A stretch of DNA of 64,000 bases from Guillardia theta CCMP2712 (lineage: Eukaryota > Protista > Cryptophyta), in NCBI RefSeq assembly GCF_000315625.1, contig NW_005434629.1, forward strand, positions 332,409 to 396,408, written 5' to 3'. The translations under genes were made by a program, and so were the position numbers. The notes beneath the pieces were generated by a model. It ran no database searches, was not told the origin of the DNA, and saw nothing but the letters and a program-made list of their open reading frames with translations. Numbering within the stretch: the stretch's first letter is position 1; each line of letters starts with the position of its first letter. Positions 11,960 to 64,000 of the stretch are shown here, piece after piece.

Positions 11960-13128
11960 TTATGCTGATCCCGAAAAGATGAACGCAGTTCTCTTCCCAT
12001 GCTTGAAGCTTTCATACGTTGTCCTGCCCCATGCATGCTCGTGCAGGAAGTCTCCTTCTCTCACTCCCTCCAGCCACGTTCCCTTCAAGTACTCTCGGCT
12101 TCCGTCTTCTAAATAGAGCAAGTCATATGGCCCAAAGCACATGCACAAAAGAAAATCACAAATCGCAAAAGAAACAAGATTTATAAAAGAAGGGCCAGGA
12201 GCTACCGTAGTTGAGGTGCGCGATTCCAGGGCCATGGCGAACTCCTTGCTTCCACTATCAACGGATGTCATGAAATCTGCACAAGTAAGGCAATGCAGCG
12301 GAAAGACTGAAGAAACATGAGGTGGAGACGAGAGATCGTTACCTTTCCAACAAAGGTCTCCCTCATGGATGGGGAGCCATGCTTGCCAACCTCACTGTAC
12401 GTTCCATCTCCATGGAACTTGCCATCCCTGAAATCACCTTCATAGCAACTGCCGTCCGCAAAGAAGTAAACACCTGTTCCGTGAAACTTCCCATGATGAA
12501 ACTCTCCCTCATATCGAACCCCATTAGATGCATCAAGGGTTCCCCGCCCATGCTGAGTACCTCCCTTGAATTCCCCGCTGTACACAAACTCCACCCCAAC
12601 ATCCGTGAACGTCAACTGCCCATGGCCATCCATCTTGTTGTTCACGAAGTTCCCAACAAAGTTACAACCACTCTTCCCAGCATACTTGTAGACACCATGT
12701 CCCTCTCTTCTGCCCTCTTGGAACTGTCCCTCGTACTCATCGCCGCATCTGTGCCGGTACCTCCCCACACCATGAGGTTTGCCAAGTACAAAATTCCCTT
12801 CAAACTCGTCCCCATCGTGAAACTTTTGTGTTCCTTTCCCATCTTTCATCCCATTCCTCCACTCCCCCTTGTACGATCCGCCATCGCTGTATGTTCTCCT
12901 TCCTGACCCGTTGACGACCCCGTTGTCGAACTCTCCCTCGTATTCACCGAACGGTGAAGCATGCTTGCCCACTCCCTCTCGCCTTCCTTCAACCATGCTG
13001 CCATCGTATACCGAGTTGCCCATCAGAGGCAGGACAAACTTTCCTCCTCCTCCCACGCCTCCCCTGCTCCTCCCCGCGTCCCCATTCCTCATGCACAGTC
13101 CTCGAAGCACGGGGCCGCGGTGCGCCAT
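11960..13128 (-). CDS. MORN-repeat protein (may have upstream exons to about 14.2 kb)
   Basis: More than ten YxGxF/WxxGxxHGxG repeats, e.g. YEGEFDNGVVNGSG, YKGEWRNGMKDGKG, YEGEFHHGKFHGTG. Confidence 0.9.
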
Positions 13129-21445: not shown

Positions 21446-23898
21446 CTAAAACTGTGTTGTGCCGGCGACAGAAATCTTCCTTCCGTTCAAGTTTCTCAGC
21501 GTCCTCGCGTTGTTGCTCACGTGCACGTCTTGGATCATTTTCAAGTCCTCCTGCGGTGAAGGCAATCAGGCACTTGGCAGTGAAGAGTCGTGGCAGACTC
21601 ACCGATTTTATGGGAAGAACAGTCTTCATCACCAGCCACGTCACCTTTGACTTGCAGGGAGGGGTGGTCATTGATCCCTGGTAGATCAATCAGCTTGTGC
21701 TCGCATACTCTCCAGGCTTTCTCTCTTCAACGCTTTCACAGCAGTCTGCTCACCTCATAGATGTAGTAGGTGCTGAGCAGCGAATGGATGTTGACAGTGA
21801 TGTCTCGAAAACGCAGGTCCGGTATCAAGTTCCGCCCATAGCCCTTTGCTGACGATGCCACGCTGGCGATCCTTGAGACCTGAGAAAACCTCAAGGGTCA
21901 GCATTCCAGAAGGAAAGTCGTGAAACTGTCTGACCCATTGGGGCGTCGAGTCGCCAGTGTCAAAGAGGACAGCGTAATGCAGCCGAGAAAACTCGTTGTT
22001 GTTTGGCGTCAGGCACTGGCCATTCCCATTGGTAACGCATCCTGTCCTCTCCATCAAGAACTGAACTTCCATGGCCTTCCTCGAGCCCTCGATCGCATGC
22101 TCCGATGGCGTGTGAAAAGTGATCTCTCGCAAGGTGTAGATTGAGTTCTCGTAGGTCATCGTTGGTTCTCCAGGAATCTGAAGCGTAAGAGTGTACGCAT
22201 TGTTTTGACTGCAGAAAAGTGCAAGTCAGAAAAGAAAAAAAACGAGAACAAACATGCACAAGAGAGATAACGAGAAAATGACATGCAGCAAGTGACAACA
22301 GCAACGATGAGTATGCAGAACAGCAGAGTGACTTACTTGTTGCAAGGCAAGCAGTCGCAATCTTTTAGTAGGACCTTCATGGGGTCCGTGTTGCTCTTCC
22401 CGAGTTCGAAGATCAGAGGCCTCAGCCCAACAGGTTCGACACAAGCCTTCCCCCAGTTTACATTCGCCATGCACTCATTGGTGTAGAGGTCCACGGGACT
22501 CTGATTGTTCGAGTCTGCAATGCAAACATCTCGAGATTTCTGATCAGGCAACTTCTCGCAATCCTCCGCTCCGTTCCCGCATGACGCATACTCCTTCAAA
22601 CTCGGCCACCACTCCTCCCCTCGAGGACCATGGTAGGTCCAGTGGTCGGGAGCTTCGGGGCGCAAGGATGTCAGCACTCGCTGTCCGAGCATGAAGTAGG
22701 GGCGAACGTTGGCGCCCTGACGCATCTTGAAGCCTTGTATCGCTGAGGTTGACAGCGTGATCACTGATTTTGAGATCATCCACTGCACTCCAAGATAGCA
22801 GGGAGGGTACGTCTGCGAGCCCACGTAGGAGTAATACTCATTGAGGAGGGGGCTCAGGGCTTCGTTGAGCTCGCTGAAGTCAAGGCCCTTGGCCAGCTCC
22901 TTCGGCGTGATGCTCACGTCCTTCAAAGTCCCAAGAAGCTTCACGATCCAGTCAGGATTGACTACCGAATCACCTCCATCCTTGAAGAGGATGGCCATCG
23001 CGAGCTTCGGCGTGCAAGGAATGTGATCGGAGATCTCATCGGCAAGGCAATGCATGAACTGCATTTCCATGTCGAGCGCAGTGCTGTCGATGAGGTGCTC
23101 AGACGGAGTATGGAAGATGATGCGATCCAACTTCATCCTCTTGTGCTCTGAGGACTCGGGAACATATGGGCCCTCTGAGCACACCACATCGCAAACCTTG
23201 CACTCCTGCGTGCAATGCTGAACTTCAAGGTAGAAGGAGCGATCGAAGGCCTCAGTGATCGTTGCCTTGGGGTTCTCCCACGTAGGTCCAGATCCAAGAG
23301 GGAACGATGGACCATAACAGGTTGGGACGGCGTTCATGGTGACGATGTCGATGGGTGAGCTCATCTTCCCTGTCAAGTCTGGGTCGCAAAGCTTGTAATT
23401 TTTGTTCAAGCTCGACCAAACATCTGGATTTGAGTCTGCACGCAGAGTTACAAGCATGTTTGAGCAATGCTAGAATTCACACCTGCATCTTCGTAGCTCC
23501 ATGGGACCGGCTTCTCATTGGGAATCCTCTTGTAGTTCCTCAGCCAATTCTCGTAGCGGTTGTGTAGCGCCGAATCGTCATTGAGCGGATCAGGAACCCC
23601 ATTCACCGTGACGTAGGCATCGAGATTGTCGCTGTAGGGCTCGTACCCATCCTCGAGCCAGTCCTCCATGGCGAGCTGCTGCGGCTCTGAAGGACTCTTG
23701 ACCAGCAGCTCTGCATCCACTTGATTCCACTTGCTGTCCTCAACTGCCTGGTGAGGGACAACCTCCACCTTAGGTTCACTGCTGATGTGGTCAGCGTCAC
23801 CGAGCAACACCTGGGCAAAGCATGTTGCACCTGCTCACAGCCGAACAGATGGCAGCGAAGGAGATGAGAGCCAGACAACCAACGAGGCACCTCCGCAT
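21446..23898 (-). CDS. Secreted tandem two-domain alpha-carbonic anhydrase-related protein (probably acatalytic)
   Basis: Signal MRRCLVGCLALISFAAICSA. Domain 1: WSY..SSPIDI..FHTPSEH..YYSYVGSQTYPPC..VQW. Domain 2: WTYHG..NQSPVDL..FHTPSEH..YQGSMTTPPC..VTW..NNART. Confidence 0.85.
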
Positions 23899-30024: not shown

Positions 30025-33000
30025 ATGCGAGAGCCATCAATACGAGCATGCACTGGCCCGCTGTCAGTGCTCGTTAGCATCGTTATCTGTTTTATCAATG
30101 CAGAAAGACAGCCTGCTTGGCACGGACCCGATGCTAGTTTGTCTTTCATTAACTTCGAAGAACATGTCCAATTGAGAAGCAGTCGTATAGTCTCTGTGTG
30201 TGATCTTGCGATCAGCTTTGGAGGGTTGTCGCATGAAGGCAAGGATTGCAGATGTAACTCTGCGTAACACCACTAACAACGGTTTCAGGACGAACAAACC
30301 GTCTGATTGCGTTGGATATATCTAATAAACAAGCAGTGCATCTAAATTCAAGTGGAGCCCTTCCCAGCCCACGATCTAGTCATGCAATGTCAACTGTGAA
30401 CAACACTGTCGTCCTGCATGGTGGCATCACGAATAAAGGTCGTGGGCATTACTTTCTTTGAGCCCATTCTGTCATCCTTTCTCACTGGTTCCTTGTTCGC
30501 AGGATATACAAGTGAGATGTACCTGCTAGATGTCACGTCGATGCGATGGATAAGCAAATCTCCACCAGGGACATACGGGCACTCGCTCATCACCGCCTCG
30601 AACAAGATCATCTTATTCGGAGGGGCAACGGATTCAGGTCTTCTGCTGTGACTTGCTGTGACCTTGTCACCTTGAGGGCTCAGGATTTTCAAACCAGCTC
30701 TATGTGTTTGACTCCAAGTATAATACATGGGCGCTTGTAACTGATGGCGGAACAATGGTGCCTCCTGCCCGCTACTATCACGCGGTAGCAAGTAGAGATA
30801 AGACCATGTTTCTTTTCGGGGGGATGAACGACGAAGGTGAGCTATGCACTCAACCGCCATGCTCTGCGATTGAATATTCGTGCAGCATACCTCGACGATC
30901 TTTACGCTCTAGATACGGAAGAGTACGTCTGGACTTTGATAGAGGCAAACGGTGAAAGACCCAACGGACGAGGAAGTCATGCCATGGTGTTTGTTGATCA
31001 GCTTCTATTCATGTTTGGTGGCTACTCTTACCGTAATTTCTCTCTTTCGCTGCTCGGCTCACGCTCATGCTCGTGCTCATACATTCTTTAAGGTTTGAGC
31101 AACGAGCTCTTCGTCCTCAACACCTCCTCCTTGACATGGTCCCAGCCCCTCGCTTCCGGTCAGCCACCCTCGCCAAGGATGCATCACTCCATGGTGTGTG
31201 AGGGGAAGAACATCTACATCTACGGGGGGGAGACGGAGAGCGGTAAGGAGAAAGGGAGAAGGAGGATCGAGGGAGGAGGTGGGGGAAGTGAAATCACTTG
31301 TGTGTTTTGCGTCGCAGAATATTCAGACGAACTTTTCGTCTTGGACACGGGAACTTTACATTGGCGATTGTTGTATCCTCCAGGTCGAATCAGAAGCTCT
31401 ATGTCATCGTTTGGGAGTTTGATCGTCATGTTTGGAGGATATGCTAGCAATCAGAGTAAGCACTGCAGCTGTGTGTCCGAATAGTCCTTCAAATTTAATT
31501 CCTATTCCTTGTTCCAGAGTTGTCATCTGATCTTTTTGTTCTGGACGCGCATAGTATGCAGTGGAACTCTCCTCCAATGTCCGGCCCCTTGCCGTCAGCT
31601 CGTTGGGGCCACAAGACCGTAGTGGTAGAGGATCGTCTCTTTCTCTTCGGAGGAGATACTGACACCGGTTTGTACTTGCTGCTTGATACTTGACACGCTC
31701 ATAGTGCTGTAGTGTACTCTGATGAGCTCTATGAGCTCAACCTTGTTTCTATGACATGGTCTCTCAAAGAAAAGAAAGACCCCACGCCGAGTGCAAGATG
31801 GGGTCACGCGATGGTAGCGGCAAGAGATGGCGTTTTTCTATTTGGTGGCAAAGCAGCGAATGGTAATCCTTGCTTGTGCTTAATTTTACCAGTGACAGCA
31901 AATAGGTTATCAGAATGATCTTTATCTTCTTGATGTCTCATCTTGTACCTGGAAACTTCTTGAGACCAACGGAACGAAACCATGGCCTCGCTGGACTCCC
32001 GCCATGGCGACTCATTCCGGCTCAATCTTGCTCTTTGGCGGATACGGCATCCATGGTTACTCGAATGAGCTTTATTTGCTCGACACAGAGCAAATGAGCT
32101 GGAGGGTAGCTCAAGTCAGTGGGTCGATCCCATCTCCTCGATCTGAGTCAGCCATGGCTGTGATAAATGACATGCTCTACGTCATCGGAGGTGTCGATGT
32201 CGAAGGTCTGAGACACTGTGTCCTCAGCCAACACAGCTGATGGTGTGTGGCAGGCGCGCTGAACGACATGTTCGTGCTGGATCTCACTGACAGCATCTGG
32301 AAGCAAGAGCAGCCAGTGAAAAGTTGGTCCAGGGCATGGGGACAGGCGTCCTCCACAATCAACAAGACAATCTTCGTGTACGGTGGCTACACCGGATCCG
32401 GTGATATGTTTCCGGTGATGTTCTGATTTTGTGATACCTTTGCTGTAGATTTTCTGTCTGATCTCATCATCTATGATGTGTCAACCATGCAAGATGATGT
32501 GTTAGCAAGCCCCACAGGGAGATGTGCTCACTCAGCAACCATGGTGGACAAATCGATGCTTGTGTTCGGCGGCTATGGAAACACAGGTTACTACTGCTCT
32601 GACGCGGTTCTTTTATGATCCGATGTAATGCAGGATCGTCACTAGACATGTACAAGTTACAACTATCCAATCTGCGATGGTCCCTCGAGGATGGTGGGGG
32701 ATACGCTCCTCTGGTGAAGTCCTACGGACAAGGTATGGCAGCGGTTGAAAGCGATGTTTACACCTTTGGAGGATACACAAATCGAGGTAATGGTTGATGA
32801 ATTCAGCCCCCGAAAAGTGGTTCAAACAGAACTTGATTCTTTTGCTGTGTATTGTAGGATACTCTGCAGAATTTTTCAAGTTTGATCTTGTCAAGGGCGC
32901 ATGGGAATTTGTTTGGCCTCGATCTCGAGCAGGTCATTCAAGCGTTACGATTAACTCAGAGCAGATCGCTTTGTTTGGAGGCTACAGCGGATACGGTGAG

Positions 33001-36000
33001 GAGCAAGGGATGAAAGCGGAGGGAATACAGCTGACATGCTTGTACTTGAAGGGTTCCTTGATGAGCTCGTCCTCTTCAACATCTCAAATCTGCAATGGAC
33101 TCTGCCGGAAACGACTGGAACCAAACCTCTGGCACGCTATGGGCATGCAATGACGGCTGTCGGGGATGAAGTCTTTGTTCACGGAGGATATACTTCCAAT
33201 GGTAGACCTGCTTGAGCGACCTCTCTTGACATCTCTCTCACTGCTTTACAGGACTTGCCGCTGATCTCCACACCTTTAACACAAAATCCGCAACCTGGTC
33301 GTACGTCTCCACAGCAAATTTTCCACCTGCGAGATATGCTCATGGAATAGCAGCAGTCGGCAATCACTTGTACCTTTTTGGGGGACTCTCTTACAGTGGT
33401 GAGTAATCTGTGTTCTTGGACATGGCAATCTTCTCGATCACACCTCTCTCTCGCCCTGTTCATGCATCAATCATGTTTGTTACACAGAACGTCACATTCA
33501 CCATTTCCATTGTACTGCAGGTTTCTCGACAGACCTCTACGTTCTTGACCTGAGTTCCATGCAATGGGAACGACACATAAAGAGGACAAACCCTCGGTAT
33601 GACGTTGGAATGACCGCGGTCAATCGGCTCTTGGTGTTCGTAGGAGGATATTTTGATCAAGGTATTCGAAGTGAGGAAACGTCATCTGCAGGAGCTAAAG
33701 TACTTGACAGATCCCCAGCCCATGTTTGCAATCTTCAACAGCAGCTCAATGTCTTGGATCAATCTCTCTATTCAGAAGAAACCGATCGGACGTCGAGCAA
33801 CAGCGTCCTTTGCCTCTAGTAACAAGCTCTATGTCCATGGGGGACAAAGCATCAAAGGTTGTTGTCAGCTTCGAGTGACGGTTCAATGAAATGCTGTCGA
33901 AGGATATTCCGCTGAGCTGATGGCCTTTGACAAGAACTCCATGACATGGACATACCTCACCCCACAGAGTCGATCTGCTGCTGCAATGTGTGCTGTTGGC
34001 GATCTCCTCTACATCCACGGGGGTGATACCGATACCGGTGACGAGTCACGAGTCGAAAGTGCTTGTTATTCATCTCTCCCTCAGGTCTTAATGACGAGCT
34101 CTTCGTCCTCAACACCTCCTCCTTGACATGGTCCCAGCCCCTCGCTTCTGGTCAGCCACCCTCGCCAAGGATGCATCACTCCATGGTATGTGAGGGGAAG
34201 AACATCTACATCTACGGGGGGGAGACGGAGAGCGGTAAGGAGAAAGGGAGAAGGAGGATCGAATTGACCAGGGAGTATTTGGCAGAATATTCCGACGAGC
34301 TTTTCCTGCTGAACATAAATACAGCAATTTGGGTCAAAGTGACGCAGGTGGGAGAAAAGCCTTCAGCGAGATCAGGTCAAGCTATGGTCGAGCACGACGG
34401 TCTTGTGTATGTACATGGAGGGCTCACGGCAGATGGTGATGGAGAAATAAGTTCATGTTTCGAGGCTTGACATAGAGCTTTAAGGACTCTCTTCCGAACT
34501 CTTCGCGCTGGACATTGCCAACATGCGATGGAGCAAATTACAGGGCAATGACACGATGCCATCAGCTAGGAGGGGACACAGCCTGGTGTCTGTCGGAGAA
34601 AGCCTCTTCTTGTTTGGCGGAAAGCTTGCTGCAGGTAGACTGATAAGGAAACAAGCAGTTACTGAAGGGTCCTACAGGTTCTTCTAATGAAGTCTTCCTA
34701 TATGATTCTTCCTCCAACTCTTGGACCTTGCTGCAGCCATCTGCTGCCTCTGAGCCTTCTGCTCGATATGCTCACGCCATGTCAGCTGAACGAGAACTGG
34801 TGTACATGTTGGGGGGGATGACGGAGACAGGTACTGCAAGTCTAGCCCTGAAGCTGCGTCACTGTGATCCGATCCTGTTCTAGGGATTTCTGATGAGTTC
34901 TGGTTGTTCAACATGAGCTCAAACACATGGGAGAGAAAAGTGCTGACTTCTGCATTCTCTTCAAAGTATGCTTCAACCATTGCCCTTGTGAATAACCGCC
35001 TCTTCTCATTCGGCGGTGAAACATCCAATGGTAAGTGAATCATCTACCCATCAGCTGATGTTGAGGCCCTGATTGTTTCTCGCAGGGGTTGTGGATGATC
35101 TGGACGTGATCAGCACGCAATCGTTGGATCTTCTTCACAATCCAGACAAGCCTGACGCTCGTGTTGGTCACTCGATCGTTCTGGTCGGAGGCTCCGCGTA
35201 TCTCTTCGGGGGTTACACAAACGATGGTAAGGAAAACTGATCAGCTCATTCCTTGCAAATTGATAGTCTTGCGTGCAAGGGTTCTCCGGGGATCTCTTCA
35301 GCTATGACATCCTCTCATCCAAATGGTCGAGGTTGTTGACGACAGGAAGTGCTCCCGGTGCTCGAGAATTTCATGCTATGGCCGCTGGTGGGACGGACAT
35401 TTTCGTGTTCGGTGGCGTCTGTGACTCAGGTCGTCTTATCGCTTCCTCGCCAATCTGAGCCTGAAGCTGCAGGATACTTGAATGACTTGTTTGTCCTCGA
35501 CACGAACTCCATGCGATGGTCAGCCCCCGCCCTCTCTGGGTCTCCTCCGCCTCCTTGCATCGGAAGTTCGATGGCTGCGTATGCTGGCGGCATATTCCTG
35601 TTGGGGGGATATGGCTATAACGGTATGACAAAAAGATGCGCCAAGGAGTGATGACTCGCGTGCAGGATATTACGATCAGTTGTATAGGCTGGACGTGGAG
35701 ACGTCGAGCTGGGGTATAGCTGAAGTTACAGGTTCCCAACCATCGCCTCGTGCAAATCAGGGGCTGATAGTGAGAGACGACAAACTTTACTTGTTCGGAG
35801 GAGACTGCTTCTTAGGTGCGATTCCGATTGCAGCGAATGTTGCCATCAGAGTGGATGGATGTTCTGAATGTCTGTGTAGTGATGAGTTGTCCAATTGTGT
35901 TCATGCATCGAGCTTGACATGTGAAAGCGACAATGAGAACAAGGATCAAACAATTTGATCGGTAACTCTTACGACAGCATGGTCAAACGAATTTCACATC

Positions 36001-39000
36001 TTGGATCTTTCCTCTCTTCACTGGACAAACTTGTCTTTCACAGGCAAAGTCCCGAATCCTCGATGGGGAACTGCGTTCGCCCTGGTCGAGAATGATGTCA
36101 TCATGTATGGAGGAAGCAACAGCACAGGTGAGAATGACTGCAGCAAACGGAGGTGACTTTTATCGCAGACATGCATGCAGCAGACTTCTTTGAAGATGTT
36201 TTTATTCTCTCTCTCTCAAACGAGATCGATGTGCATCAAACTCTAACGAACGAATTGTCTCTTCAACTTGCTGACAGGTTCTGAACATCTGTTTCTTTCT
36301 CGAATTTTAATATCATGCTCTCAACATTTATTTCTTTGTGTCAACATTCATTTCAGGTTCTCAACTTTCGTTTCTTCGCATCTGGTTCTCATGGATCGAG
36401 ATCTTGTTTTGTGCTCAGCGAACCATCCGTGCATTTACAAGTTGCAGAACATGAAAGTTATGTGGCAAGCAGGAAGTGTGTTGTGTGGAGAAGGGTGCAG
36501 ACTGGCAATCGCAGGCTCACAAATCTCATGTGATAGCAGCCGACTTGTGTCTGTGATGTTTGACATGCAAGGAGCCAAGCTCTCCATCACCAACAGCTCC
36601 TTTAGCAATTGCTTTTGCTCATCTGATGGATGCTCTCTGCTCCTGCAGGGTGGTAGCAGCGCTAAGCTCGTCAACACAACCTTCGCACACCTCAAGAATG
36701 ACCTTGGAGGTGCAGCAGTGACGGTCAGCGCAAGTGACTTGGATGCATATGGCTGCCAGTTCAAGGAGTGCGAATCACGATGGGGAGGAGCGATCTTTTC
36801 TTTCTTCTCCTCGACCGAGAACGTGAAGCTCTCCTGGTCGAGCTCCAAGTCTGTCTGGCGGTCGCATGTGACTGTCGGCCGGTCTCTCTTTCAGAGATGC
36901 GCTGGTGAGCAGGGAGGAAGCGTCTTCTCGGCTGACAGCGTCCTCGCTCTCTCCGACGTCATATTCGAAAGCAACTCCGCTGCCTATGGGGGAGCTCTCT
37001 ACATGGCCGACGCATCTGCTCTCACACTGCATGGTGATGTCACCTTTAACAACAACTCTGCATCTGTGAGTGGAGGAGCCATCTACTTCGACAAGGACTT
37101 GGAGGCAGCTCATGGTGATCTAACCAGCAGATGCACCAACGACAATCGCGCGCTGTCATGGGGATCGTGCGTTGGCACTTCGTATCATCGACTGTCCCTG
37201 GACGTTATGCAGGTCAGGGTGTTCCCTGGCATAGCAGCAAGGATTATTGTGAAGAAATTGGACCTCTTTGATCAAGTGATCACAACAGGGAATGAACTTC
37301 TCCAACTGCTCTCCGTCAAAAACGGAAGTCTCGACATCGACACGTCAATTATGATCGTCGGAAACAGTGTTGCAAGGCTCAACCAGGGAGTTGCGGAGTT
37401 TCTGGTTTCCTTCAAACCAACCTTTACGAAGATGGACGTTCGAAGGAAGCAAACCAAGATTGACTCTCATCCGCTGATCTATGTAGAGGGCATCGACTTG
37501 CAGTCCTCGGCTACCATGAGCAGTGACCTTCATACTCTAGTTTTGCAATCTGACAGCGATGTTTGCCCAACAGGATACATCCTGTCTCTCAGCTCAGAAC
37601 TCCCTTCGATAGGAGGATGCGTAATCTGCGGGAGAGGAAGCTACTCGGTCGACCCCTTCGCCGGGGGACCAGCTTGTTTTCCATGCCCAGCAGGAGGAGT
37701 GTGCGATCATGGAGGCAGCAATGTGTCGTTCCCCGTCGGCCATTGGATGCTCGAGAGCGGCGAGTATCGAGTCCAGTCTTGCCCTCCAGGTCACTCTCTG
37801 GTTCGAGAGGAAGCAAAAGCTGCGCGAGACGACTGTCCCACGTGCCCCTATGGCTCCTATTCTATCGCTTCTCAGCACATCAGCAACGCCACTGGATGTC
37901 TCCGCTGTCCTACGACAGTGACGTGCATGGGCGGAATGAACATTAGGGCGAGGAAGGGCTTCTACGTCATCAGCTCTGCCTACGTGAGGACCGCCCTTCG
38001 TCGGTCCCCAGGACAGGAGCTGCTCGTCTTCCGCTGCGCAACTTCCGCGTGCTTGGAGGGCAACCAGTGCTTGCAGGGCTACATGGGCCCTGCCTGCGGG
38101 TTCTGCAACTCGACGGAGGATGAGAAGGGGCGGCAATGGATGCGCGTGGGGAACGAGTGCGTGCTCTGCTCTGAGAACGAGTCCCTGGTGCCCTTCCTGA
38201 CGGTTTTGCTCTCCTTGGCTGCTCTCGTGTGGATCGGAGTCTTCTGGTTTCCGATCTGGGAGTCCATGAGCTTTTGGTCAAGGGGAGTAAAGTGGCTGCA
38301 ACTGACATCGGAGCATGTTGGGGGGATGCTCGTGTCGACGCTAGAAAGAGCGTCTCTGTCTAAGGCTGCGGTACAAGACTTGAAGAGTTTGCTGACAACC
38401 TCAGTCAAGATTGTCATCGGTTTCTACCAGGTCACCCTGACATTTGTGAGGAACTTCAATGTCAGCTGGCCTACTCGGCTCACAGACGTGATCAGTAGCG
38501 TCAGTTTTCTGTCGCTGGATTTCTTTTCTCTCCCTGCCACAGACTGCTTGTGTTCATCCTTATCGTGGATGCAGAAGCTGTACGTCGTCACTCTCATCCC
38601 GCTCGTGGTCGTGGGCCTCATCGTCTTGCCAGGGCTGGTGGCCATGCGAATGGACGTCAAAGTGAGGAGAGTGGTGACGAGACGAGTCATGTTCTGGTTG
38701 CTCTTCTTCCTCTTCACTGCCTACCCCTTCGTCTCTTCCACCATCCTGCAAACCTTCAGCTGCATGGACCTCGGCCCCGTCGGCAACTTCCTCCGAGCTG
38801 ATTTCACTGTGACGTGCCCGTTGGAGACGCGAGGAAGGGAGTTCAAATGGGCGATTATATTCACCTTCATATACCCACTGGGAGTTCCTCTCTTCATCCT
38901 CGCCGTGCTCTTCTACTACCAGGTACCCCAGCTTGCTCGGAGGAAGGTCTTGGTTGCCAAGTTACAGGCTGTCGTAGAGAAGCTGAGCTGTGACTGCAAC

Positions 39001-40056
39001 GAGAGGGACTGCGACGGCAGTCATTTGCAGGACATGCTCTCTCAAGTTTACAGCTGCTCGCTTCTCGCTGATCCGTTGCTCCTTCTTAGCCAGAAGGACA
39101 TGCAGACGTTGTGCTCCTTCCTTCAGAGGCGCTCAACGCAACAAGGCTCCAGCATCAACATGGCGATCGAGCGGCACAACCAGCAATCGCTGGACTTCAT
39201 GAAGCTCATCGATGCAGCACTGGATCAAGGCGACCTCTCGCTACCGAAGCTGAGGTGGGAAAGTGACTCGCAGACCCGCTGGAGAGAAGTGGAGGAGACG
39301 GCGATCGAGCATGCAGGGTTCCTTTTCGACTCGTACCGGGTAGAGGTATGGTACTTCGAGAGCATCGAGATGGTCAGAAAGCTCGTTATGACTTCCCTCA
39401 TCGTCTTCATCTTCCAAGGAAGCTATCTTCAAGTCGCCTTCGCTGCCTTCTTCACTTTCCTCGCTCTCATCCTCCACTTCCTCTGCCAGCCTTTGACACG
39501 ACCCTGTCTGGACCAGCAGCAAGGCTTGTCGCTCACCATTCAGTTTGTGACACTTTTTTATGGCCTCACTCTCATCCTCGAAGACGAGGACGTCAAGTCC
39601 CCGGCAGACGCGACCTACAAGGCTCTCTTGGAATACTGTATGATCGGTCTGAACAGCTTCATCGCCTTCTACATCATCGTCAAGTTCCTCCTGGTTCAGA
39701 TGTTCCGGTCAGCCCGAGAGATGTTGATCAGTTCAGGTTGCAACAAGTGCTCCAAAAGAGACATTCGCGTCGAACATCATCCGTCTCTGTCATATTCCAA
39801 CTTTTCCTACATGAGGAATGAAGCTAAGGAGGCCCCCCCTGTCTCTCCGAAGGAAGACGAGACAGCAACTTCTGAGCAGGCTGCGTCACCTGCGGCAATG
39901 GAGGAAGGAGGAGGATGCAGAGCTATCAGCGTGGAGACGGAGAGACCTGAACCTCAACCGTGCGCTGCTGATTCTCAACAGATGATCGACAAGATCGAGG
40001 TGGAAGATTCCTTTCATTCTGCAGACTGCTTCCATGCTGCAGGAATTCGACTTTGA
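30025..40056 (+). CDS. Giant surface receptor: signal peptide, ~30 kelch repeats, parallel beta-helix (GGAI) repeats, GCC2/3-type Cys-rich repeats and a CRMP/TRP-like multipass membrane domain; about 31 exons
   Basis: Signal LSVLVSIVICFINA. Repeated PSPRxxHAM...YxFGG..NELFVLD...W kelch units. Last exon 36357-40056 has GGAA/GGAIF/GGALY/GGAIY repeats, CPTGY..CGRGSY..CFPCPAGGVC repeats, and the TM-block motifs KIVIGFYQV, YPFVSSTILQTFSC, FLRADFTVTC, YPLGVP and GFLFDSY..WYFESIEMVRKL. Confidence 0.85.
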
Positions 40057-47229: not shown

Positions 47230-49479
47230 ATGGCGGGTGAAGACACCAAGTACAAGAAGGCTGTTGCCACAGCTGCCTTTGAAAAGATGTCAAAACGTCA
47301 GCAACGCGCTCTGTTCGCTGCTGCAGGTTTGAAAGCGGGAGCAAACGTTTCCCTCGCGTATGCCATTGACAAGTTTAGAAGGGACAAGATCCGAGAGATT
47401 GTTTTTTATTTGTTTTTTCTCGTCATCTTCACCACGAGTGCTTTGATACAGAGAAATGTTACAGACTCTCATTACTACATGCAAACAGTCAAAGACGCGA
47501 TTTTGAATGAGAATTTTCCCGATGTCACTTGGTTTAAAACTTTTAATGATGTTGCCATCGATGCAGATTTCTGGGATTACATGACAACGGTTATTCCTCA
47601 GTATCTATACAAAGACAAATGGTACAACGGTCAACAGTACACTTCTGCAGAGATGAACTATGTTCTACATGTCAATAGATTAGTGCAAGCTCCACGAATA
47701 CGACAACTGCGTGTGAATTCGCAAATCTGTCCGGTTCCTCCTCGACTTGCAAATGTGATCAAGACTTGCTATCCGGCTTTCAGTACATCAGCAGAAAATC
47801 GAACAAGCATTCCCGGATGGCCCCCTGGAACTTTAGTCACGTACAAGACTGCAAGCCAACTTGCAACGAGCGAGTATCGGAATGGACTTCTTCCTTACAC
47901 CGGCGGCGGGTTTGCAATAGACCTTCCTCTGTACTTTAACAAAACTCAAGCTCTCGATTTTTTCAATTACTTGAAGAGTGTGAAGTGGAGCGATCTTCAT
48001 ACAAGGGCAATCTTCTTCACCTTCGCCTTGTACAACCCGGTCAACGGTCTCTACCTCTCCGTGCTCCTTCTCTTTGAATTCCTGCCGTTCGGAGAAGTTC
48101 GCCCTTCCTCTCAGTTCCGTGTCATTAGGATGGGTCTGAGCACTGCCAACGACTACGCCACAGTTCTGCTCGATGCCATGGTTTATCTCATGGTGTTTTC
48201 CTACATCCTGCAGGACGTGAGGAAGATAGCAGCCATGGGGAGGGTATACTGGACTCACTTCTGGCACTGGTTCAACTGGGTCAACTACACCATCTTCATG
48301 GTGTCGCTCTACTTCAAGATCAGCTTCTACATGGCGAGCTTGAGGTACGTCAGCGGTAACGGAAATTCCGACATGCAGACCGCAACCATGGACTTCGAAG
48401 CTATCGGGTGGACCTACTATCAGATGGTTAACTTCCAGGCCTTCAACAACATCTTCGTGTGGTTGCGCGCCTTCACCTATATCAAATACTTGACGACGGA
48501 TATCGCCAACCTGTCCTACACTCTCACCAATGCAGCTAAAGATTGCGGTCTGTTTCTCCTGATCTTTGCCATGGTGATATTTGCCTATGCCCAAGCATTC
48601 CACATTGCTTTTGGAACAGATATAGGGACTTACCAAACTCTCTTGGAATCAATTTTCGGCCTGTTCAAAACGTTGTTGGGAGATTTCAACTTCAACGCAA
48701 TCAAGTCCAGCAATGCGTACCTGGGGCCCCTACTCTTTATCACATTTGAGGTCGTGTGCTATTTCATATTCTTGAACATGTTCTTGGCAATCCTCAACAA
48801 GTCATATTCTGATGTGATAGACAAGGGTGTAGATGATCCTATGACTGTAGAGTTTCGAAATACGCTAGCAGCAAACTTTAGGAGATTCATTGACAGACTC
48901 AACTTGTGGAAATCCGAGGATGGTTCCCGCAATCAGCAGGAAGATGGAGACGAAGATGAAGAGGAAGTGAAGAAAATTGAGAAGAAGAAGACAGCGCTGG
49001 ATGGTGAAGCACTGGGAATGATGTTGAACACCATACAAGAGTTATCAACAACCGTTCGAGGCATCAATGAGAAGATCGAGAACGTGAGCAAAGTACAATC
49101 TTTGAGTGGAGCTGGCAGGTTGCAGGTGCTCAATAGAGCCTCAGTTGCGGGCTCCCTCGACAACCGAGACCTTGATGGAAGCAACTCTCAGAACTCTCCG
49201 ATCAGTCCTACTGACAAGCAACTGTCTGCAGTTCAACCGGATATCAATCGAAATGGTCAGAAAGTGAGGTCGACCTCCAAACTGCACGATGACAACCTTA
49301 CTGAAGAACTTCTGGAATCGGATGCAGCTGGTGCAGACAACAGAACAATCCAAGAGAAACAAACTGAAAGCGCGCAAGGAAATGTTTCAGGCATCAAGCA
49401 ATACAAGAGGCCAACTCTCCCAACTTTAGAAAGCAAGACAAGGCCAGATGATGAAGAAGACGCGACACCAAGGCTATGA
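47230..49479 (+). CDS. PKD2: Polycystin-2 (TRPP) family cation channel, intronless, 749 aa
   Basis: TM1, then TOP domain (FWDYM, NRLVQAPRIRQLRV..C..CYP, YTGGGF, WSDLHTRAIF..YN..FEFLPFG), then TM2-6 with pore LLGDFNF, LGPLLFITF..FIFLNMFLAILNKSY, and a C-terminal coiled coil. Confidence 0.92.
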   Translation: MAGEDTKYKKAVATAAFEKMSKRQQRALFAAAGLKAGANVSLAYAIDKFRRDKIREIVFYLFFLVIFTTSALIQRNVTDSHYYMQTVKDAILNENFPDVTWFKTFNDVAIDADFWDYMTTVIPQYLYKDKWYNGQQYTSAEMNYVLHVNRLVQAPRIRQLRVNSQICPVPPRLANVIKTCYPAFSTSAENRTSIPGWPPGTLVTYKTASQLATSEYRNGLLPYTGGGFAIDLPLYFNKTQALDFFNYLKSVKWSDLHTRAIFFTFALYNPVNGLYLSVLLLFEFLPFGEVRPSSQFRVIRMGLSTANDYATVLLDAMVYLMVFSYILQDVRKIAAMGRVYWTHFWHWFNWVNYTIFMVSLYFKISFYMASLRYVSGNGNSDMQTATMDFEAIGWTYYQMVNFQAFNNIFVWLRAFTYIKYLTTDIANLSYTLTNAAKDCGLFLLIFAMVIFAYAQAFHIAFGTDIGTYQTLLESIFGLFKTLLGDFNFNAIKSSNAYLGPLLFITFEVVCYFIFLNMFLAILNKSYSDVIDKGVDDPMTVEFRNTLAANFRRFIDRLNLWKSEDGSRNQQEDGDEDEEEVKKIEKKKTALDGEALGMMLNTIQELSTTVRGINEKIENVSKVQSLSGAGRLQVLNRASVAGSLDNRDLDGSNSQNSPISPTDKQLSAVQPDINRNGQKVRSTSKLHDDNLTEELLESDAAGADNRTIQEKQTESAQGNVSGIKQYKRPTLPTLESKTRPDDEEDATPRL

Positions 49480-63132: not shown

Positions 63133-64000
63133 TTAAGCAATGAAGTATTCATGATCTTGACATCCTTCGAACAACCAACTCTTGTCATCTGCTTTCTTCT
63201 TTCGCATTTTCTTGACATACGTTGACCATGCTAGCTGCCCACTTCTGTCACATGATCTCCCTCCCCCTTCTCCCTGATTCAGCCACGAGATGAAATTCTC
63301 CACGTATTGATCGTATATTTTCTTTCCTTCATATATCGAAGATTCTGACCGACTATCTATGAAAGAATTCAGTTCCATCACTTGCATCTCAACATTCTCT
63401 TCTTGTGAGATTTGCCTCATACTTCTCCGGATGAACTGATGAAAGCACTTCATGAGATAAGCCATGTCTGTAAAACGTTTGCTTGATGGTCTCTCAAATT
63501 TTGATCCATTCAGTTTCTTCAAAGCAGGTATCCCTTTGGCATAGTTGCCAAAGTGATACAGCTCCCATGCACTTTTGAAGCTCTTGGCTGCTTGAGAAAT
63601 TCGAATGGTTTTCAGATTCGCCTGTTGTATTGATGTATTACGGTCAACTGACGGATCGCCATTGACACATTCTGTATCCACACTCATTGTCCCCCTGTTC
63701 ACGTCTCCGAGGTTACGCGCCTGCTCATGGTATTGAATGACATGTCGCCTTCCCTCGAGCAACTGCTTCAGCATGACTGTAATTGCGTCATGGTTGTCCG
63801 AAACATTCCGTTTCACTTCATCTAATTGCAAAATCACCTCCAGCAAACTTTGGTTGGACTGTTCGTGATGAATTGCTTGCTGGCTTTGATCCTCTGCAGT
63901 TTCACGCACTCGATCAGCAACTACCTTCATGCCATTACACATTGAAGCAATTTTGCCATCTATCTCTTTCAGTTTTCCTTCCAAACATTCCATTCGGACA
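63133..64000 (-). CDS. C-terminal part of a coiled-coil + GCR1_C-like protein, as in Crypton tyrosine-recombinase transposons (frame runs off the window)
   Basis: ISQAAKSFKSAWELYHFGNYAKGIPALKKL resembles the GCR1_C motif (S/T-V-x2-LW-x-EW-x2-G...P-x-L-x2-L). AT-rich and intronless. Confidence 0.5.
   Translation of the reverse strand, partial: VRMECLEGKLKEIDGKIASMCNGMKVVADRVRETAEDQSQQAIHHEQSNQSLLEVILQLDEVKRNVSDNHDAITVMLKQLLEGRRHVIQYHEQARNLGDVNRGTMSVDTECVNGDPSVDRNTSIQQANLKTIRISQAAKSFKSAWELYHFGNYAKGIPALKKLNGSKFERPSSKRFTDMAYLMKCFHQFIRRSMRQISQEENVEMQVMELNSFIDSRSESSIYEGKKIYDQYVENFISWLNQGEGGGRSCDRSGQLAWSTYVKKMRKKKADDKSWLFEGCQDHEYFIA

What the first reader, a model, noticed from the sequence alone, without database searches (positions are those of the whole stretch)
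30025..36277. One-exon-per-blade kelch cassette array on a giant membrane receptor: possible combinatorial receptor system
Seen: introns fall at the same point of nearly every kelch repeat, a few codons after the GG motif, and all those I phased are phase 1. Measured exons are multiples of 3: 30289-30438 (150), 30503-30637 (135), 30684-30836 (153), 30886-31032 (147), 31093-31242 (150). There are about 29 such exons and about 30 blades, enough for five 6-bladed propellers; one exon (about 31906-32206) holds two blades. The rest of the protein is a single 3.7-kb exon. Inference: any blade exon can be skipped, duplicated or swapped without a frameshift. That gives a variable extracellular recognition module on a constant stalk and TM base, like Dscam, VLR or exon-shuffling LRR/TPR immune genes, but built from secreted kelch blades in an alga.
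Basis: partly seen in the sequence, partly recalled or inferred. Interest (0 to 1): 0.85.

Follow-up and report, generated by a model that had tools for sequence, protein, structure and literature searches.

The report
Kelch receptor gene, one exon per blade
A cryptophyte alga gene for a giant membrane protein really does encode 30 kelch blades in 28 same-phase, frame-neutral exons, but transcripts show every exon joined in order, so this looks like a relic of ancient exon duplication and not a combinatorial receptor system.

Summary
One + strand gene (30025-40056) has 31 exons and encodes 2760 aa. Exons 2-29 are all multiples of 3 (135-153 nt; exon 10 is 300 nt and holds two units). All are bounded by phase-1 introns at the same point after the GG motif. 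The last exon is 3700 nt.

Transcript contigs from three studies reproduce my introns exactly. They join the kelch array to the 3.7-kb exon. They break only at one duplicated exon.

The combinatorial reading is not supported:
- Only the all-inclusive exon path is assembled.
- The repeat units are old (about 28% aa and 43% nt identity).
- No spare, reversed or decayed blade exons lie in the introns or elsewhere in the 64 kb.
- No conserved or complementary intron elements exist.

One exception is a 169-nt tract, from exon 6 into its intron. It is 167/169 identical to exon 20, which points to a recent intragenic conversion.

The C-terminal part is a PMP-type beta-helix, a Cys-rich stalk and an 8-9-TM module. 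Homologues of that module match Pfam TRP (PF06011). This base is widespread in protists with varied ectodomains.

Verdict: a neat new example of a known kind, exon-per-repeat arrays made by tandem exon duplication.

The parts
30025..40056 (+). Whole gene: 31 exons, CDS 8283 nt, 2760 aa, no internal stop
   Evidence: Model built. 15 of 15 listed RNA joints agree. MMETSP peptide P0192 is an exact substring, residues 1744-2760.
30025..30238 (+). Exon 1: start codon, hydrophobic signal-like segment (residues 6-24) and the first partial blade, ending ...ISFGGLSHE. It is followed by an inferred GC-AG intron at 30239-30288.
   Evidence: The junction is inferred from frame and motif only.
30289..36127 (+). 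Array of 28 symmetric phase-1 exons (E2-E29), 135-153 nt each, one kelch repeat unit per exon; 29 units in all
   Evidence: Pfam kelch families. RNA joints.
31906..32205 (+). Exon 10, 300 nt: two repeat units with no intron between them, read as a precise intron loss
   Evidence: A single contig piece covers 31905-32203.
31102..31270 (+). Conversion or duplication tract, copy 1: exon 6 from its 10th base, plus 28 nt of intron 6
   Evidence: 167/169 identical to 34094-34262 and both differences are synonymous. Transcript contigs break here.
34094..34262 (+). Conversion or duplication tract, copy 2: exon 20 plus 28 nt of its downstream intron
   Evidence: Contig arithmetic puts both copies in their own exon context, E5-E6-E7 and E19-E20-E21.
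36169..36277 (+). Exon 30, 109 nt: last partial blade strand plus linker; changes phase from 1 to 2
   Evidence: RNA joints at 36128-36168 and 36278-36356.
36357..40056 (+). Exon 31, 3700 nt: the whole non-kelch part of the protein
36526..37152 (+). Right-handed beta-helix region with GGA(I/L)-type PMP repeats
   Evidence: Chlam_PMP E=7.5e-9. Aligns to beta-helix proteins. Beta_helix in P0043.
37150..38184 (+). Conserved stalk domain and Cys-rich ephrin-receptor-like region
   Evidence: 28-35% identity to P0001 and P0003 over this part. Weak Ephrin_rec_like hit. 31 Cys in residues 1529-2130.
38185..39696 (+). Multi-pass membrane module, about 8-9 hydrophobic segments with a loop of about 160 aa
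   Evidence: Hydropathy. 12 of 30 homologous TM regions match PF06011 TRP and 12 of 30 carry EF-hands. Atlas features 0.94-0.95. No direct Pfam hit for the window protein itself.

Best explanation
This is one constitutively spliced gene of a cryptophyte alga. It encodes a giant surface protein made of these parts, in order:
- a signal peptide;
- 30 kelch blades, probably five six-bladed beta-propellers;
- a PMP-type beta-helix;
- a conserved stalk;
- a Cys-rich region;
- an 8-9-TM module related to the Pfam TRP (PF06011) channel-like family.

The one-exon-per-repeat, all-phase-1 layout is a historical footprint. An ancestral unit of exon plus intron was multiplied in tandem at the DNA level, so every copy inherited the same intron position and phase. 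The copies then diverged to about 28% identity while the introns stayed. One intron was later lost (exon 10). One short intragenic gene conversion recently overwrote one exon with another, 14 exons away.

Shown here: the gene structure, the transcript continuity, the divergence of the units, the conversion tract and the domain content.

Inferred: the duplication history, the number of propellers, the extracellular topology and a receptor/adhesion-plus-channel role.
For: - Exon and phase regularity.
- RNA contigs of three studies reproduce the introns and include every exon in order, linking the kelch array to the 3.7-kb exon.
- Units are 28% aa and 43% nt identical, with no recent copies except E6/E20.
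- The E6/E20 tract includes 28 nt of intron, so it is a DNA-level event and not RNA-mediated.
- There are no other blade-like sequences in the introns, on the minus strand or elsewhere in the window.
- There are no conserved intron elements.
- The same stalk and TM base occurs in many protist proteins with other N-terminal modules: about 5-12 kelch blades, CUB, ephrin-receptor-like repeats, or a kinase in place of the TM module.
- TM-module homologues match PF06011 and carry EF-hands.
- Published precedents show that exon-per-repeat arrays arise by clonal exon duplication (PMC6564038). They also show that such a layout can exist without any sign of shuffling, as in the Ectocarpus type II LRR-kinase exons (PMC3341825).
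Against: - Contigs drop rare variants and only 12 raw RNA reads were laid, so low-level exon skipping is untested.
- The E6/E20 event shows that exon-level exchange is still possible.
- No orthologous genomic locus could be obtained, so conservation of exon number and order between species is untested.
- The period-6 signal expected from whole-propeller duplication is weak (p about 0.05).
Confidence: 0.75

Rival explanations
1. Combinatorial alternative splicing: blade exons are skipped or chosen in many combinations to give a repertoire of ectodomains on a constant base.
For: All 28 exons are symmetric and phase 1, so every skip is in frame. Raw-read depth was too low to see rare isoforms.
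Against: - Contigs from three studies show only the full path. They run unbroken across 10-13 junctions and fragment only at the E6/E20 repeat. Total joints were 27, against 28 constitutive introns expected in the stretch.
- There are no clusters of similar alternative exons and no intronic selector or docking complementarity.
- Removing one unit would leave 29 blades and break a closed propeller. This last point is an inference from known 6-7-blade kelch propellers.
Confidence: 0.06
2. [quoted passage not shown] Blade exons would be exchanged within and between paralogues to diversify binding surfaces.
For: One recent exon-plus-intron copy lies 14 exons away (167/169 nt). Unchecked first-reader notes of this scan describe other exon-intron cassette arrays and kelch receptors in the same genome.
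Against: - Only 1 of 406 unit pairs is recent. All the others are at most about 58% nt identical.
- There are no decayed or reverse-strand blade exons in the introns, which is a hallmark in Ectocarpus.
- Exon lengths vary from 135 to 153 nt, unlike the clonal fixed lengths of 72 or 90 bp.
- No homologue above 50% identity turned up for the C-terminal module. The best hits are Hanusia proteins at 45-50%.
Confidence: 0.12
3. Parallel intron gain: introns were inserted independently at the same proto-splice site (xxG|G) of an already repeated, intron-less kelch array.
For: The junction is G|G in most units (Gly codon in 18 of 29), which resembles a proto-splice site. The introns share no sequence.
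Against: It needs about 28 independent insertions at exactly the same codon position. Old duplicated introns are also expected to have lost similarity. The E6/E20 tract shows that exon and intron are copied together here.
Confidence: 0.05

Closest known systems
[quoted passage not shown] 2019, PMC6564038)
   Same: There is one repeat unit per exon and an extreme single-phase bias, so the array reads as an interlocked in-frame unit. The genes are predicted membrane or sensor proteins of a protist. The explanation given is clonal exon duplication.
   Different: There, thousands of genes hold tens of thousands of exons of identical length, with young copies still similar at the DNA level. Here there is one gene with 28 exons of 135-153 nt, phase 1 and kelch instead of LRR. 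The units are diverged to saturation, apart from one pair.
[quoted passage not shown] 2012, PMC3341825)
   Same: An alga with one repeat per exon, frame-neutral exons and a proposed recognition role. That paper also describes type II LRR-kinase exons with the same layout but no trace of shuffling, which is the situation found here.
   Different: The hallmarks of active shuffling there are absent here. Those hallmarks are inactivated or reverse-strand repeat exons inside introns, and recent paralogues differing in exon number. The proteins there are cytoplasmic. This one has an extracellular kelch array.
Dscam1 mutually exclusive exon clusters and lamprey VLR cassette assembly
   Same: Only the idea of a variable ectodomain on a constant base.
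   Different: There are no alternative exon clusters, no docking or selector RNA pairing and no flanking donor cassettes in the 64 kb. Transcripts carry all exons.
Protist membrane proteins with a PMP beta-helix or ephrin-receptor-like ectodomain on a Pfam TRP (PF06011)-type multi-pass module
   Same: They share the stalk, the Cys-rich region and the TM module. There are 6321 relatives at E<=0.001, and the nearest are in the cryptophytes Hanusia, Proteomonas and Cryptomonas. 12 of 30 TM regions match PF06011.
   Different: Relatives seen here carry about 5-12 detected kelch blades, or other N-terminal domains. This protein has 30 blades. Its own TM region does not reach any Pfam threshold.

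Membership tests
Kelch-repeat beta-propeller proteins | Repeated motif of about 44-56 aa with hydrophobic strand-GG, Y/F...D, W and R/K positions, matching the Pfam kelch models | tested here: met
   E10 matches Kelch_KLHDC2_KLHL20_DRC7 at E=2.3e-26 and Kelch_1/2/3/4/6 above their cut-offs. E20 also matches. 29 units are aligned.
Kelch-repeat beta-propeller proteins | Blades close into propellers of 6 (or 7) blades | not testable with these tools
30 = 5 x 6, and a weak period-6 similarity (p about 0.05), are only suggestive.
Exon-per-repeat arrays made by tandem exon duplication | Introns at the same position and phase in successive repeats, with exon lengths that are multiples of 3 | tested here: met
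   28 of 28 exons are symmetric and 29 of 30 introns are phase 1. RNA confirms the joints.
Dynamic exon-shuffling receptor genes (Ectocarpus type) | Inactivated or reverse-strand repeat exons within the introns of the repeat domain | tested here: not met
   The profile search of six frames of the window finds 29 hits, all in the coding exons. The intron translations give no hit better than E=0.58.
Dynamic exon-shuffling receptor genes (Ectocarpus or Tetrahymena type) | Many repeat exons still similar at nucleotide level within and between paralogues | tested here: not met
   Mean nt identity is 43%. Only E6/E20 are close (95% over the unit; 167/169 in the tract). Paralogues could not be examined.
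Dynamic exon-shuffling receptor genes | Paralogues or strains differ in exon number and order | not testable with these tools
   No genomic locus of an orthologue or paralogue with kelch exons could be fetched. RNA from two organism labels is identical to the window.
Dscam-like mutually exclusive or combinatorial splicing | Multiple mRNA isoforms differing in which repeat exons are included | tested here: not met
   Only the all-inclusive path appears in contigs of three studies. Power is limited for rare isoforms.
Dscam-like mutually exclusive splicing | Conserved intronic docking and selector complementarity | tested here: not met
   Inverted repeats of 17-24 nt at 75-89% are not placed in comparable introns. 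Direct repeats are coding motifs only.
VLR-like cassette assembly | Incomplete germline gene flanked by donor cassettes | tested here: not met
   The gene is complete and transcribed as it stands in the genome. There are no extra blade sequences in the 64 kb.
Pfam TRP (PF06011) channel-like membrane proteins | Multi-pass domain matching PF06011 | tested here: inconclusive
   The window TM region has no Pfam hit even at E<=10. 12 of 30 aligned homologues match, best at 8.9e-9. Atlas feature neighbours include PF06011 clusters at 0.94.

The most novel reading that the evidence does not exclude
Blade exons may be exchangeable units over evolutionary, not somatic, time. Intragenic conversion, such as the E6/E20 event that put a blade into a non-equivalent propeller position (15 units apart, not a multiple of 6), would recurrently rewrite single blades of a 30-blade ectodomain. 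Strains or populations of this cryptophyte would then differ in blade content of a receptor-channel. This would be a germline, exon-wise diversification route for kelch propellers.
Probability: 0.15. Interest if true: 0.55.

Novelty: new member of a known kind. Interest (0 to 1): 0.3.

Why it matters
It is an unusually clean example of how a very long repeat protein is built from one exon-intron unit: 28 consecutive frame-neutral, same-phase exons for kelch blades. It comes with transcript proof, one precise intron loss and one datable exon conversion.

It also gives a full-length model of a 2760-aa member of a large, uncharacterised protist family that joins varied ectodomains to a TRP(PF06011)-like membrane module.

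It does not, on present evidence, reveal a new diversity-generating receptor system. Exon symmetry alone should not be read as one.

Tried and rejected
1. A gene finder that only maximised open reading frame read through many introns and was discarded. I replaced it with motif-guided splice sites, which I then checked against RNA.
2. I looked for blade remnants in the two long introns (122 and 162 nt). An apparent 'SDEL...SSLT' stretch in intron 35816-35977 gets no profile support.
3. The search for higher-order periodicity gave only a weak mod-6 signal.
4. Word-indexed protein searches with the C-terminal exon were swamped by PMP-repeat proteins and missed even Hanusia P0043. The second one, restricted to the TM part, found only P0043.
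5. Attempts to fetch genomic loci of relatives failed or returned no DNA: P0043, P0192, P0157, P0046, P0127, P0183 and the window's own ORF.
The scan with a 3-sequence alignment gave 20 distant TM-module relatives (21-32% identity in the best segment) and none had kelch blades.
7. I did not predict the structure of the propeller array. The spliced protein has no reference, and I did not type long sequences.
Full report
**What is there**

The region lies in eukaryotic DNA with about 50% G+C and very short introns. A first model that only maximised ORF length read through introns. I therefore placed splice sites by the kelch motif and tested them against RNA.

The resulting model is a + strand gene from ATG 30025 to the stop at 40054-40056. 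It has 31 exons, a CDS of 8283 nt and a product of 2760 aa without an internal stop.
- Exons 2-29 are 135-153 nt (exon 10 is 300 nt), every one is divisible by 3, and every one enters and leaves in phase 1.
- Exon 30 (109 nt) shifts to phase 2.
- Exon 31 is 3700 nt.
- The 30 introns are 41-162 nt (median 49.5). The split codon is Gly in 18 of 29 phase-1 junctions.
- The first intron (30239-30288) must be GC-AG to keep the frame and the motif. This is inferred and not covered by RNA.

**RNA check**

I laid one raw RNA run and transcript contigs from three other runs (three further studies) on 30500-36499.
- All 15 listed joints are GT..AG and coincide with my introns. These include the 162-nt intron at 35816-35977 and the last two introns, 36128-36168 and 36278-36356.
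- The tool counted 27 joints in all, against 28 model introns in the stretch. There is therefore no excess of alternative joints.
- Contigs of 2096 nt and of 5680 or 5833 nt run uninterrupted over 13 and 10 junctions.
- The long contig continues through exon 31, so the kelch array and the 3.7-kb exon are one transcript.
- Contig lengths fit the exon sums exactly. The 2096-nt contig equals 22 nt of exon 6, plus E7-E19, plus 40 nt of exon 20. The assemblies therefore break only at the E6/E20 repeat, as a 31-mer graph must.
- The raw RNA run gave only 12 reads, so rare isoforms are untested.
- An MMETSP peptide (P0192, 1017 aa) is an exact substring of my model.

**The repeat units**

Pfam assigns the exons to kelch families. 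A profile of the 29 units finds exactly 29 hits in the six-frame translation of all 64 kb. All are on the + strand and all lie inside the exons. Exon 1 contributes the end of a unit and exon 30 the start of one, which gives 30 blades.

The intron lies 4-6 residues after the GG. In Pfam terms this is the middle of the kelch motif. Kelch_6 positions 1-43 span the fused boundary inside exon 10, and Kelch_1 positions 1-21 stop at the exon end. So an exon has the period of a blade but is offset by half a motif.

The units are old. Mean identity is about 28% aa and 43% nt, there is no strong lag periodicity, and the period-6 signal is weak (p about 0.05).

**The one recent event**

Positions 31102-31270 and 34094-34262 are 167/169 identical. 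Both differences are synonymous. The tract starts 9 nt inside the exon and runs 28 nt into the downstream intron, after which the introns are unrelated. This is a short DNA-level conversion or copy between exon 6 and exon 20. Both copies are transcribed in their own context. Another first-reader note of this scan (s1-430640) reported the same pair.

**Tests of a cassette or combinatorial system**

- The introns contain no decayed or reversed blade exons. The best profile E-value on intron translations is 0.58.
- There are no shared intronic elements and no positioned complementarity.
- There are no extra blades in the flanks.
- In Ectocarpus, active shuffling is recognised by intronic inactivated or reverse-strand repeat exons and by recent paralogues that differ in exon number. 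Ectocarpus LRR-kinases have the same exon-per-repeat layout with no trace of shuffling (PMC3341825).
- Tetrahymena LRR genes show that single-phase exon arrays arise by clonal exon duplication (PMC6564038).
- The layout here fits that origin, but it is old and quiescent.

**The rest of the protein and its relatives**

Exon 31 encodes the following parts:
- a PMP-repeat beta-helix (Chlam_PMP E=7.5e-9);
- a conserved stalk and a Cys-rich region, 28-35% identical to other proteins;
- about 8-9 hydrophobic segments.

An exhaustive profile search found 6321 relatives (142 at E<=1e-30). The nearest are Hanusia phi proteins at 45-50% identity. Other cryptophytes, Proteomonas and Cryptomonas paramecium, follow. 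This is why I call the source a cryptophyte. Guillardia is a guess that I did not verify.

Relatives combine the same base with other N-terminal modules. These are 5-11 detected kelch blades, CUB or ephrin-receptor-like repeats. One, Cryptomonas paramecium P0157, has a protein kinase where the others have the TM module.

Of 30 aligned TM regions, 12 match Pfam TRP PF06011 (best 8.9e-9) and 12 carry EF-hands. Atlas features agree. The window protein itself reaches no Pfam threshold there.

**Verdict**

The Dscam/VLR-like reading is not supported by any test I could run, and the only RNA available contradicts it.

The best explanation is constitutive expression of a giant kelch ectodomain on a TRP-like membrane base. 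Its exon symmetry is inherited from tandem duplication of an exon-intron unit. One intron was lost and one recent exon conversion occurred. The finding is a new member of a known kind.

Noticed in passing
window 47230-49476 (+): A 749-aa single ORF about 7 kb downstream encodes a polycystin-type cation channel (PKD_channel E=3.8e-31, Polycystin_dom 2e-27). This is a second, unrelated channel type next to the kelch/TRP-like gene.
   Followed up: no
window 31243-31317 and 34235-34285: The introns after exon 6 (75 nt) and exon 20 (51 nt) are multiples of 3 and have no stop in frame. Their retention would insert 25 or 17 residues (GKEKGRRRIE...) without breaking the frame. The other six introns whose length is a multiple of 3 each carry an in-frame stop.
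   Followed up: partly
window 30239-30288: The first intron of the gene appears to use a GC donor (AAG|GCAAGG). The nearby GT donor would create a TGA across the junction.
   Followed up: partly
window 22336-23457 (-), 12271-13128 (-), 63136-63993 (-): Neighbouring ORFs match eukaryotic-type carbonic anhydrase (1.8e-19), MORN repeats (1.7e-41) and, weakly, an Argonaute N-terminal domain (2.2e-4).
   Followed up: no
P0157 / P0239 (Cryptomonas paramecium transcriptome proteins): Relatives join 11 or more kelch blades and the same stalk to a protein kinase domain instead of the multi-pass module. The kelch-stalk ectodomain is therefore reused on different signalling bases in cryptophytes.
   Followed up: partly
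protein collection, cluster of P0060: The 90% cluster holding this gene's C-terminus is represented by a 138-aa fragment (P0060), with the 1017-aa P0192 hidden as a member. Length-filtered searches therefore miss the gene's own products.
   Followed up: yes
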